DNA from: Macrostomum hystrix
Taxonomy: Eukaryota; Animalia; Platyhelminthes
Assembly: GCA_950097015.1 (NCBI GenBank)
Contig: CATNEN010000035.1
Location: 1,426,001-1,490,000, forward strand
Reading direction: 5' to 3'
Length of the DNA stretch: 64,000 bases
Position 1 is the stretch's first letter. Each line of letters starts with the position of its first letter. The position numbers and the translations under genes are program-made. The notes beneath the pieces were generated by a model. It ran no database searches and was not told the origin of the DNA. It saw only the letters and a list, made by a program, of their open reading frames with translations. This document shows positions 21,467 to 24,400 of the stretch, piece by piece.

Positions 21467-24400
21467 CTGTGGTGAGAGTACAATGGTGCAATGTACAGTC
21501 ACTGGCACGCACTCCCACAGCGGATGTATATATTTTCAAAAATCTTTGTTTTCATTACAAAGCTCAATAAATAATGAGGTGAAATTAGACCCGCAGCCAG
21601 CCAGGAGGCGATTCTGCCCATTTCGCTGATTCCTGAGCACACGCACACAGATACCGTACGCAGGCACGGGCTTACACAGGGGTGTACATCTGCCCTGACT
21701 TTCTTATCGTCAGGCAGTGTACACTTCACTGTGTCCTTGGAGGTTGGCCCTCAAGGGCGCAAATTGCACGACAAGCCCCCAAGCCTTCTCTCCTCGGCTG
21801 CGCCCCAAATAAATGTGGCCTCACCGCGGAATCGAGCTCAGGGACCTTTGTGCGAGAGGCAAACGCGTTAAGCGCTCTGCCACCGACCCAAAGCTTTTTT
21901 GAAAGAAAAAAATCCTAGAAACGAAACTGTATGCTTGTCACCTTGTATGTGGCAGTTGTCACCGTAGCGAATGCCCACCAGGTAGTGCCCCGGTGTTGCC
22001 GGTGTGTACGAGAACTCGTAGCCGTCGGCGATTTCGCGACAGTTCAGCTGCACTTTGCTTGGCCCGTCGATGGTCACAGCCAGCGCGCCGCTAGGCGCGT
22101 CAGCTGTGGACACTAGAAAGGCCGCTCTCTGACCCACCCTGGCTCTGTGAAGTCCTTCGCCGCGAGCGCGCACGCGGGCAGCAGCGGCGGCGACGCTGAA
22201 ATCGACCACGGCGTTGTGATGACGCGAAAGATCACCGTTAGCCTCCCAGTCACCGACTGGGACCTAGAAATTCGGTGGATATTTTTCGAGTTTGTTGAAA
22301 TTTACTTGCGAATTCTAATTGGCTGGCGACGCTGTGTAGCGAAAAATACTGTCTCTATTCTCATTGGCTGGTGGAGATAAATTTGATTCGTCGATTGCAA
22401 TAATAATAGTAATAATTTGACACTAGACCCAAGGGCTAGGGCAGGTGTTGTGTCAAGCACACTAGCTGGTGAGGACTGCACACCTAATGTTCTCCCCGGC
22501 TCTCTCGGACACCGGTTGACAGCCGCGTGTCAGCAATGGAATTTATATTTTTCCAAACATATCGGTAGCATCCAAACCCCACTGAATTGCCGCACAGAAC
22601 TGCTTTATTCCACGCCAGCAGGAATTACTATTACCGACGAAATTTCGGTAACTCAGCAGCTGAGTAGACTGTGTGCACATCAGGGCAAAGCAGCTTGCCA
22701 AAGGCTGCACGAATAGTTCTAGACTAGGTCGGGAGTCGAACCCAGGACCATCTGATCCAGAGTCCGACGCCTTGCTGACTGAGCTATCCGCCCTTGCTGC
22801 GATAGCCATCGGTTTATTTTATTCTACCGAGGGCAGCCACTCGTAATTGGCTAAGAGAGATAAGCCTCGGTTCCGCGAACGGTATTGGCTGAACAACGAC
22901 CCTCAGTGCCTCGTTTCTAATTGGCTGCAAGACACGATGCTAGATTCTGTGATTGCCATTGTTTAACAGTAGAAATACCAGGCTATTTTTCACCCGGTGG
23001 AAAGACCACGGGGCAATATTTCAAAGTGAAAGTCCACCATATGGAAAAAACTTTCTGCCCTTCACGAGCAACTAACTTTCAAAGGCGTTCGACGTCAGGA
23101 TCATCGAGATATTCAGCGATCCTTGTCGAAGACCCTGGTGACAAGGACAACTAACATTGCTCTGAATTAAACTCTATGGTGAATCAATATGGGTTCAATA
23201 ACAATAATTGACAGTAGAATAGAATAGAAAATAATAATGATGCAATTTTGTGAGCAGAAAAGTTGTGCCAATATTGGTGGCTTTGCCCCTGTTACTGTTA
23301 AAAGCAATAACTTTCTACTGCTTTAGTTTTTGTCTTTTGTAAGAATCAGACTGGGATATTAAATCCTCTATTCTCATTGGCTCCCTGACTATTTATCTCC
23401 CAATCCTGCCTGGCTAGCTCCGCCATAATGAAGTCAACCAATGGGAAATTTCTACTCCTGTCAAACCTGAAACGGAGATCCTGGAGCGTGTCGGCCGTCC
23501 AAGGTACACGGACACCGCGTACAGCCCCGGCAGCGGCACCGTCCAGGCGATGGCGCACCAGCCGTCGCCGCGATGATCGCTGAACTCGATCTGCGCCTTG
23601 CTGGGCCCCTCGACTGCCACGCCAAGAGCTCCGGCGCCGCGCGCCTGTACTCGAAATTCGTTGCCAACACCGACGCCGCCCCGACGAAGACCGGGTCCTT
23701 CGGCCTCGAGCTCCGGTCCTGAAATCTGCTGCTGCAGACTGGACGGACCGTTATTGCCGATGTCGGCAGCCGAGCCCGCCACCGCCAGCGTCCACGGACT
23801 GCCCGGCACGTGCTGCTCGGCGAACTGCACCGCCACCGAGTAGTTTCCGGGCGCCGACGGCGAGAACGACACCAGACAGACGCCGTCGCCGCAGTCGGCG
23901 CAGTCAACTTCGGCTCGACCGGGGCCTTCGACGGTGACAGACAAGCTGCCGTAGCCGGCTCCGCTGGTGTCAACTCGGAACTCGCACGGCCGGCCAACGG
24001 CTGCCACCGCCGGGGAGCCGGACAGGGCCTCCAGACAGTCACCGTAGGCTCGAACCCGGGCCGCGTTGGCCAACTCGCTTTCGGCAACGGCGATGACGAA
24101 TGGCGATCCGGCGATTTGGCGACCGGCCCGGCATAGCACCGACACCCGGTGGGGTCCGGCTACGCGCGGCGAGAAGGCGACGCCTAGGCGACCGTTGGCG
24201 AGACGGCGAAGCTGGCAGGCCTCTTCGGAGCCGCTGGGGTCGGTAACAGAGGCTGTGAGGCCTGGAATCAACGGGTGCAGCAGAGGCTGAAAGCCAGAAT
24301 CCTTGAATACTACTACTACTACTACTAATACTACTACAATAATAATAGCTTACTACACCTGCCCAATTCGGGTCAGATGTGCAGCAGACAGCACAGAAGC

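What the first reader, a model, noticed from the sequence alone, without database searches (positions are those of the whole stretch)
21942..24261. Filamin lacking Ig20 and Ig22: the Ig21 ligand site has lost its autoinhibitory partner
Seen: the C-terminal repeats match vertebrate Ig16, 17, 18 ([22 protein letters not shown]), 19 ([14 protein letters not shown]), 21 ([17 protein letters not shown]), 23 ([13 protein letters not shown]) and 24. Ig19 and Ig21 lie in one exon joined by a ~20-aa linker ([22 protein letters not shown]), and the last strand of Ig21 and Ig23 share the next exon, so no unseen exon can supply Ig20 or Ig22. Established: in FLNA, strand A of Ig20 occludes the CD face of Ig21 (integrin/migfilin site) and is released by force; the Ig18-19 and Ig20-21 pairs form the conserved mechanosensor. 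Inference: this paralog keeps the ligand-binding repeats 17/19/21/23 with a constitutively open Ig21, a naturally rewired mechanosensor.
Basis: partly seen in the sequence, partly recalled or inferred. Interest (0 to 1): 0.72.

Follow-up and report, generated by a model that had tools for sequence, protein, structure and literature searches.

The report
Flatworm filamin missing repeats 20 and 22
A Macrostomum flatworm expresses a filamin (an actin cross-linker that senses force) that has lost two of the nine C-terminal repeats kept in order in every other animal filamin compared here, including the repeat that normally covers the main ligand-binding site, so that site is probably left uncovered.

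Summary
The core observation holds. The window carries one filamin gene on the minus strand (46906-21021): two CH domains and 18 Ig repeats. Its C-terminal rod reads Ig16-17-18-19, a 23-aa linker, Ig21, a ~22-aa linker, Ig23, hinge, Ig24. Position-specific HMMs, PDB matches and a per-repeat tree support these assignments. No window repeat falls among Ig20 or Ig22. Spliced transcript contigs from four runs join these exons directly, so this is not a misassembly or a missed exon.

One detail is wrong. The last strand of Ig21 lies in the same exon as the rest of Ig21. It is hidden by a 1-base insertion in the assembly at 23506, which all four transcript sets lack.

A garbled Macrostomum lignano protein model spans the same Ig19-Ig21-Ig23 stretch, so the layout is a lineage trait. 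Every bona fide filamin compared (fish to nematode, including cestode and monogenean) keeps all nine repeats, except one unchecked acanthocephalan gene model.

Ig18's masking strand and the Ig21 C-D face are conserved. Linker 1 folds as disordered and varies between the two species. "Constitutively open Ig21" is therefore plausible, like the engineered FLNa-delta-20, but untested. Whether a canonical filamin also exists in this genome is unresolved. The scan had no earlier filamin note on this genome.

The parts
43537..46906 (-). Actin-binding domain exons: CH1 (46906-46562, continuing in 46111-45977) and CH2 (43908-43537)
   Evidence: tblastn with fish and oyster filamins gives 50-64% identity, and 94% over one 35-aa exon piece. 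Pfam CH PF00307, E 1.5e-14 and 2.3e-17.
29285..39725 (-). Rod 1: eleven filamin repeats spread over many exons, the same number as in the oyster filamin P0006
   Evidence: Repeat HMM on all minus-strand ORFs; Pfam Filamin PF00630 on two of the exons; repeat counts of the reference filamins.
26381..26775 (-). [quoted passage not shown]
   Evidence: Transcript contigs and the joint 25133|26381; position HMMs Ig16 44.5 bits and Ig17 36.5 bits.
24876..25134 (-). Exon holding the C-terminal part of Ig17 and the N-terminal segment of Ig18, including its strand A (RAELLMVG...[12 protein letters not shown])
   Evidence: Joints; Ig17 HMM 92.1 bits; Ig17 clade 97/93*; comparison of the N-terminal segment with six filamins.
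24089..24260 (-). C-terminal part of Ig18, at the start of the large exon 24260-23467
   Evidence: Ig18 HMM 61.2 bits against Ig20 34.5 bits; Ig18 clade 100/100*.
23780..24088 (-). Ig19 orthologue
   Evidence: FLNA Ig18-19 chain 2k7q, E 1e-38. Ig19 HMM 93.7 bits, next best Ig17 82.9 bits. The tree leaves it unresolved among the odd-numbered repeats.
23711..23779 (-). Linker 1 ([23 protein letters not shown]), standing where the ~98-aa Ig20 lies in other filamins; it holds no Ig20 strand A motif
   Evidence: Alignment A1 and the side-by-side view. AF2 pLDDT falls from 61 to 33 and no strand is drawn. The M. lignano sequence is 7 aa shorter here.
23467..23710 (-). Ig21 orthologue (repeat B). Strands A-F are in frame up to 23507 and the last strand [13 protein letters not shown] is at 23505-23467, followed by the donor CAG|GT
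   Evidence: FLNA Ig21 chains 58.5 bits. Ig21 HMM 58.4 bits against Ig17 47.5 and Ig19 34.9. Ig21 clade 90/71. The C-D segment keeps 8 of 8 strongly conserved columns.
23506..23506 (-). One extra base in the assembly that shifts the frame inside Ig21; absent from the transcripts
   Evidence: '23506 left out 1' in the single contig covering it in each of the four runs; three-frame translation.
22264..23466 (-). Intron (GT..AG) between the Ig21 exon and the Ig23 exon; it holds repeat copies but no filamin-like ORF
   Evidence: Joint that skips 1203 bases in all four runs; ORF scan with the repeat HMM.
22189..22263 (-). Start of the next exon: VPV (tail of Ig21) and linker 2 ([22 protein letters not shown]), standing where the ~95-aa Ig22 lies in other filamins
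   Evidence: AF2 draws NAVVDFSV as a strand at pLDDT 51-59.
21941..22188 (-). Ig23 orthologue, without its last strand
   Evidence: FLNC/FLNA Ig23 chains 78-80 bits. Ig23 HMM 101.3 bits. Ig23 clade 98/99*, sister to cestode plus monogenean Ig23 at 100/90*. The model's best structural matches are Ig23 structures.
21021..21465 (-). Last exon: last strand of Ig23 (SPFAVYV), hinge 2, the dimerisation repeat Ig24 and the stop codon
   Evidence: Joint 21465|21941; Ig24 HMM 90.0 bits; Ig24 clade 100/94*; Pfam Filamin 2.3e-20.

Best explanation
This is the expressed filamin gene of a Macrostomum flatworm: two CH domains, 11 rod-1 repeats and 7 rod-2 repeats. In this lineage two even-numbered rod-2 repeats have been deleted, the orthologues of vertebrate Ig20 and Ig22 (fly Ig18 and Ig20). 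Short, poorly conserved linkers of about 22-23 residues stand in their place. The Ig16-17 and Ig18-19 domain pairs, hinge 2 and the dimerising Ig24 are kept. These points are shown.

The rest is inferred. The strand A of Ig20 that occupies the C-D groove of Ig21 in other filamins no longer exists, while the groove itself is conserved. The Ig21 ligand site is therefore most likely accessible without force. The force-gated part of the sensor would be reduced to the Ig16-19 pairs, and the rod would be about two domains shorter. The protein would behave like the engineered FLNa-delta-20, or like the vertebrate var-1 splice form fixed in the genome.
For: Architecture.

Transcripts: spliced contigs from four runs, with 0-2 mismatches per exon piece, join the exons directly and lack the extra base at 23506.

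Lineage trait: M. lignano protein P0212 matches the same Ig19-L1-Ig21-L2-Ig23 span piecewise in three frames, 249 against 260 aa.

Canonical state elsewhere: every bona fide filamin in the set except one acanthocephalan gene model has 16-17-18-19-20-21-22-23-24. This covers fish, crinoid, amphioxus, hemichordate, oyster, leech, nematodes, cestode and monogenean. The literature states the same for worm, fly and human (PMC3143143; PMC11221683).

Loss of the mask: the conserved ITRKRxA strand A is absent.

Groove kept: [10 protein letters not shown] is retained, 8 of 8 strongly conserved columns.

Ig18 strand A is kept.

Linkers: linker 1 is predicted disordered, pLDDT 61 falling to 33. Both linkers differ in length and sequence between the two Macrostomum sequences, while the flanks are 85-95% identical.

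Functional analogy: FLNa-delta-20, the I2144E mutant and var-1 all bind integrin tails better (PMC1948075).
Against: No binding or force data exist for this protein. The AF2 runs used single exons that lack a strand (Ig21 without strand G, and no Ig18 strand A), so a disordered linker 1 is only weak evidence. NAVVDFSV in linker 2 was drawn as a beta-strand, and I could not test it against Ig21. The AU test does not exclude that repeat B is closer to Ig19 or Ig17 (p 0.35 and 0.16). Repeat B has a 2-residue deletion in the conserved TREAGAG loop, and in FLNA that BC loop contacts Ig20. The ligands of Ig21 in flatworms are unknown. A second, canonical filamin in the genome is not excluded.
Confidence: 0.55

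Rival explanations
1. Autoinhibition has been rebuilt rather than lost. One of the new linkers, most likely the NAVVDFSV segment of linker 2 just after Ig21, folds back as a beta-strand into the C-D groove of Ig21 or Ig23 and is pulled out by force. The sensor would be rewired but still closed at rest.
For: AF2 draws residues 17-24 of the L2+Ig23 exon as a strand added to the domain. The segment has the alternating hydrophobic pattern of a beta-strand. By my own geometric reasoning, not computed, a stretch of about 14 residues from the end of strand G could reach the far edge of strand C.
Against: The strand's pLDDT is only 51-59, and the construct lacked strand G of Ig23, so the strand may simply fill that gap. 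The fold search could not place it. Linker 2 is about 3 aa shorter and strongly divergent in M. lignano, while the flanking domains are 85-95% identical, which is unlike a conserved regulatory strand. Linker 1 is predicted disordered.
Confidence: 0.15
2. This is a fast-evolving, specialised filamin copy that exists beside a canonical nine-repeat filamin in the same genome. Normal mechanosensing would be done by the other copy, and the loss here would reflect relaxed or altered function, as with FLN-2 in worms or jitterbug in flies. It would say little about the lineage's mechanosensing.
For: Branches of the window's repeats are long: B 1.07, the Ig24 orthologue (repeat D) 1.13 and the Ig16-like repeat 1.66, against about 0.4-0.6 for most cestode repeats. 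Position-HMM scores are well below those of other flatworm filamins. M. lignano is described as a hidden polyploid in an abstract. C. elegans and Drosophila each have a second, divergent filamin.
Against: No canonical Macrostomum filamin appeared among the 150 best cluster representatives or among the fragments found with the Ig18-21 exon, where the only M. lignano hit had this same layout. No other filamin note exists for this genome. These absences are weak. The gene keeps the ABD, 11 rod-1 repeats like the oyster filamin, position-specific orthology of all seven rod-2 repeats and Ig24, unlike FLN-2 or jitterbug.
Confidence: 0.25
3. The feature is an artefact or a dead gene: a collapsed assembly, a missed exon, or a pseudogene, as the frameshift at 23506 might suggest.
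For: The assembly as written shifts the frame inside Ig21 and would stop a few codons into the next exon.
Against: Four transcript assemblies cover all the exons with 0-2 mismatches per exon piece, use GT..AG introns, lack the extra base and keep the frame open through Ig24. The same layout is present in M. lignano. No filamin-like ORFs lie in the introns.
Confidence: 0.03

Closest known systems
Canonical metazoan filamin (vertebrate FLNA/B/C, Drosophila Cheerio, C. elegans FLN-1, oyster and cestode filamins)
   Same: N-terminal CH1-CH2 actin-binding domain, tandem PF00630 repeats, 11 rod-1 repeats as in the oyster filamin, position-specific orthologues of Ig16, 17, 18, 19, 21, 23 and 24, hinge 2, and a retained Ig18 strand A.
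   Different: The orthologues of Ig20 and Ig22 are missing. Rod 2 has 6 repeats plus Ig24 instead of 8 plus Ig24. The third domain pair of the mechanosensor (20-21) is therefore dismantled. The repeats are more divergent than in other flatworm filamins.
Human FLNa/FLNb var-1 splice variants and the engineered FLNa-delta-20 (Lad et al. 2007, PMC1948075)
   Same: The strand of Ig20 that masks the CD face of Ig21 is absent. In the human proteins this raises binding to integrin beta tails.
   Different: Here the loss is fixed in the genome, removes the whole domain, and comes with loss of Ig22. var-1 removes only 41 residues and coexists with the full form. Binding has not been measured here.
Drosophila filamin 'open MSR' and delta-Ig20-21 alleles (Fisher et al. 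2024, PMC11221683)
   Same: These are filamins whose rod-2 masking interactions are abolished, or whose repeats after the sensor are removed. They give a picture of what an open sensor does: enlarged Z-discs and flightless flies.
   Different: Those are laboratory alleles with a phenotype. The fly 'open' allele opens both masked pairs. The flatworm protein keeps the Ig18-19 pair and is the natural form.
Neoechinorhynchus agilis (acanthocephalan) predicted filamin fragment P0146
   Same: It is the only other protein in the set with a reduced rod 2: 16, 17, one odd-type repeat, 22, 23, 24.
   Different: Different repeats are missing (18, 20 and one of 19/21). It is a genome-only gene model that I did not check with transcripts, so missed exons are possible.

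Membership tests
Filamin (ABP-280 family) | N-terminal actin-binding domain made of two calponin-homology domains | tested here: met
   Pfam CH, E 1.5e-14 and 2.3e-17; 50-64% identity to fish and oyster filamin ABDs, and 94% over one 35-aa exon piece.
Filamin (ABP-280 family) | Long tandem array of Filamin/ABP280 Ig-like repeats (PF00630) | tested here: met
   18 repeats found by the repeat HMM; Pfam PF00630 on every exon tested.
Filamin (ABP-280 family) | C-terminal dimerisation repeat (Ig24) after a hinge | tested here: met
   By sequence only: Ig24 HMM 90.0 bits, Ig24 clade 100/94*, and a ~37-aa Gly/Ser/Ala-rich hinge before it. Dimerisation itself was not tested.
Canonical bilaterian filamin rod 2 | Eight rod-2 repeats in fixed order (16-23) before Ig24, as stated for worm, fly and human | tested here: not met
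   Only 16, 17, 18, 19, 21 and 23 are present. Transcripts confirm the exon joins. The reference filamins all have nine (PMC3143143).
Filamin mechanosensor region (three domain pairs) | Even-numbered repeats 16, 18 and 20, each lending a strand A to the CD face of the next odd repeat | tested here: not met
   Ig16 and Ig18 are present, and Ig18's N-terminal strand segment is conserved. Ig20 and its ITRKRxA strand are absent. Actual masking in the 16-17 and 18-19 pairs was not tested.
Class A ligand-binding filamin repeat (Ig21 type) | Conserved C and D strands forming the ligand groove | tested here: met
   [17 protein letters not shown] against the consensus [17 protein letters not shown]; 8 of 8 columns with at least 70% conservation are kept. 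Ligand binding is not testable with these tools.

The most novel reading that the evidence does not exclude
Macrostomum flatworms, which include the transgenic laboratory model M. lignano, may have as their main or only filamin a natural 'delta-20, delta-22' form. Its Ig21 ligand site would be permanently unmasked and only two of the three sensor pairs would remain. That would be a natural experiment showing that force-gating of the Ig21 site is dispensable in an animal with muscle and integrin adhesion. Alternatively, a new linker strand may have taken over the masking.
Probability: 0.35. Interest if true: 0.62.

Novelty: new variant of a known kind. Interest (0 to 1): 0.5.

Why it matters
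The order of the nine C-terminal filamin repeats is described as conserved from worms and flies to humans. The Ig20-Ig21 pair is the textbook example of a force-opened binding site. A natural, expressed filamin without Ig20 and Ig22, in a genus with RNAi and transgenesis, offers several tests. One can measure how much of filamin function needs that gate. One can ask what compensates for its loss. One can also ask whether the remaining Ig16-19 pairs are enough for mechanosensing. If a canonical copy also exists, the finding is of narrower interest: it would be a case of domain loss in a divergent paralog.

Tried and rejected
1. One search gave no PDB hits because my coordinates were out of frame. 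I repeated it correctly.
2. The large representative search and the word search found no protein more than 45% identical over most of the query. The one closer hit was the garbled M. lignano fragment P0212, at 60% over 29%. The transcripts of this species are therefore not available as proteins, and I had no reference for a spliced protein.
3. The look-up of encoding contigs for P0212 found nothing, so I could not compare the M. lignano locus at DNA level.
4. I looked for a canonical Macrostomum paralog with the cestode Ig20-22 region. The list was swamped by vertebrate filamins and is inconclusive.
5. P0140 and P0068 looked as if they shared the layout. P0140 proved to have Ig20 and P0068 is not a canonical filamin.
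6. I used fold search to locate the linker-2 strand. It matched only the Ig23 domain, so the strand's place is unknown.
7. AU tests could not reject repeat B with Ig19 or with Ig17. The tests of B with Ig23 and of repeat 15 with Ig19 did not finish.
8. I considered whether linker 1 (GSAADI) or linker 2 (GD..R) are remnants of Ig20 or Ig22. There were no HMM hits, only two- to six-residue resemblances, so I make no such claim.
9. A tRNA scan of the abundant intron repeats found none.
10. Light et al. 2012 on filamin evolution is not held.
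Full report
WHAT IS THERE

The finding lies in a multi-exon gene on the minus strand. ORF listing and a motif scan show filamin-type repeats ending in GSPF from about 38.7 kb down to 21.0 kb. tblastn with a fish FLNC (P0003) and an oyster filamin (P0006) extends the gene to 46906. There two calponin-homology domains are encoded (Pfam CH). 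The oyster filamin has 11 + 9. No filamin-like ORF lies in the introns, on the other strand or elsewhere in the window.

TRANSCRIPTS AND EXON STRUCTURE

Four public runs of one study hold 41-48% of the sampled words of the 21000-25200 stretch that was searched. Laid on 21000-26900, their contigs are spliced.

- One contig per run covers 21000-21465, 21941-22261/3, 23465/7-24260 and 24876-25134. Further contigs cover 26381-26775.
- Each exon piece has 0-2 mismatches, and the introns are GT..AG on the minus strand.
- The gene is therefore expressed in the species of the window, and the exon joins are independent of the assembly.
- All four runs lack one base at 23506.

With that base, the assembly shifts frame inside the repeat called Ig21. 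Without it, the reading is ...[20 protein letters not shown] | [38 protein letters not shown].... The next exon opens with the tail VPV, a linker of about 22 residues, and then Ig23.

WHICH REPEATS ARE THESE

Three lines of evidence agree.

1. PDB sequence search.
   - The first 161 residues of the large exon match FLNA Ig18-19 (2k7q, E 1e-38).
   - Repeat B matches FLNA Ig21 chains at 58.5 bits, against 25 bits for Ig19.
   - Repeat C matches FLNC and FLNA Ig23 at 78-80 bits.
2. Position-specific HMMs. I built one HMM for each of positions 16-24 from seven filamins identified by cluster look-up: fish, crinoid, amphioxus, oyster, hemichordate, cestode and Caenorhabditis. The window's pieces score best, in order, as:
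   - Ig16 (44.5 bits)
   - Ig17 (92.1)
   - Ig18 (61.2, against Ig20 34.5)
   - Ig19 (93.7)
   - Ig21 (58.4, against Ig17 47.5 and Ig19 34.9)
   - Ig23 (101.3)
   - Ig24 (90.0)
3. A maximum-likelihood tree of 92 repeats.
   - It separates even from odd repeats at 100/100*.
   - B falls inside the Ig21 clade (90/71).
   - C falls inside the Ig23 clade (98/99*), as sister to cestode plus monogenean Ig23 (100/90*).
   - The last repeat falls in Ig24 (100/94*), and the upstream pieces in Ig18 (100/100*) and Ig17 (97/93*).

There is one caveat. With only 68 residues, AU tests do not reject B with Ig19 (p 0.35) or with Ig17 (p 0.16). 'Ig21' is the best-supported label, backed by its position and by the HMM and PDB scores, but it is not statistically exclusive.

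HOW UNUSUAL IS THE LAYOUT

I classified the repeats of all 213 proteins fetched up to that point.

- Every bona fide filamin in the set except one acanthocephalan model shows 16-17-18-19-20-21-22-23-24. This includes several nematodes, a leech, a monogenean and a cestode.
- That exception, P0146 from Neoechinorhynchus, reads 16-17-odd-22-23-24. It is a genome-only model that I did not check further.
- DeMaso et al. 2011 state that the second rod has eight repeats in the same order in worm, fly and human (PMC3143143).
- Fisher et al. 2024 describe the fly sensor as three pairs, followed by Ig20-21 and the dimerising Ig22 (PMC11221683).
- Alignments A1 and A2 show clean absences. About 75 residues of Ig20, including the conserved ITRKRxA strand A, and about 70 residues of Ig22 are missing.

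ORGANISM AND CONSERVATION OF THE LAYOUT

No database protein is more than 45% identical over most of the Ig18-21 exon. The exception is P0212, a 249-aa Macrostomum lignano UniProt model.

- It matches the window exons piecewise in all three frames, so it is a frameshifted model of the orthologue.
- The in-frame pieces are 87-96% identical.
- It spans the same Ig19-L1-Ig21-L2-Ig23 stretch in 249 residues, against 260 here.

The layout is therefore shared by at least two Macrostomum sequences. Earlier follow-up notes on this genome also call it Macrostomum. Linker 1 is 7 residues shorter in M. lignano, and linker 2 is about 3 shorter and strongly divergent. The flanking domains are nearly identical. 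This suggests weak constraint on both linkers.

HOW IT PROBABLY WORKS

Established background:
- Strand A of Ig20 lies in the C-D groove of Ig21.
- FLNa lacking Ig20, the I2144E mutant and the natural var-1 splice form all bind integrin tails better.
- Ig18 similarly inhibits Ig19 (Lad et al. 2007, PMC1948075).

Shown here:
- The Ig20 strand is gone.
- The groove of B is conserved, with [10 protein letters not shown] kept in 8 of 8 strongly conserved columns.
- The N-terminal strand segment of Ig18 is retained.

Weak structural evidence:
- An AF2 model of the single exon (Ig18 C-part, Ig19, L1, Ig21 without strand G) has confident domains (pLDDT above 90). Linker 1 falls to pLDDT 33 with no strand.
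- An AF2 model of the next exon (L2 plus Ig23 without its last strand) draws NAVVDFSV as a strand, but at pLDDT 51-59. A fold search could not show where that strand packs.

My best reading, at about 0.55, is a filamin whose Ig21 site is not masked and whose force-gated part is reduced to Ig16-19. The rod would be shorter by two domains.

Rivals:
- A rebuilt mask from linker 2 (0.15).
- A specialised paralog beside a canonical filamin (0.25).
- An artefact or pseudogene (0.03). The transcripts contradict it.

VERDICT

This is a real, expressed, lineage-conserved variant of a well-known protein family. The mechanistic inference is reasonable and has a direct engineered precedent, but it is untested.

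Noticed in passing
window 25633-39570 (introns of the filamin gene): Nearly every intron carries its own distinct minisatellite. Examples: 32 nt x 28 at 38687-39570; 24/48 nt x 37/19 at 37510-38401; CAGA x 100 at 35879-36278; 24 nt x 29 at 34948-35634; 23 nt x 24 at 32660-33207; 44 nt x 8 at 30530-30900; 7 nt x 40 at 26792-27075; 47 nt x 12 at 25633-26227. Some read as long open frames, such as FTVYSLL... and HSTDHPTC..., that are not coding.
   Followed up: partly
window 21590-21990, 22970-23166 and 24349-24742: Intron segments with summed depth in the hundreds to thousands in the transcript assemblies, with many divergent copies and loose ends. They are probably abundant transcribed interspersed repeats. 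ARAGORN finds no tRNA there.
   Followed up: partly
P0212 (UniProt A0A1I8FGJ4, Macrostomum lignano): The public model, named 'NPCBM domain-containing protein', is a frameshifted translation of the filamin orthologue. It switches among all three frames relative to the window exons, so both the name and the sequence are unreliable.
   Followed up: yes
P0146 (KAL7667910.1, Neoechinorhynchus agilis): An acanthocephalan filamin model with a differently reduced rod 2: 16, 17, one odd-type repeat, 22, 23, 24. It may be a second independent reduction or a gene model with missed exons.
   Followed up: partly
window 18576-19684 (+ strand): Overlapping GC-rich open frames just downstream of the filamin gene. 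One holds a poly-Gln stretch (QQQQQQHQHQQRQ). I did not examine them.
   Followed up: no
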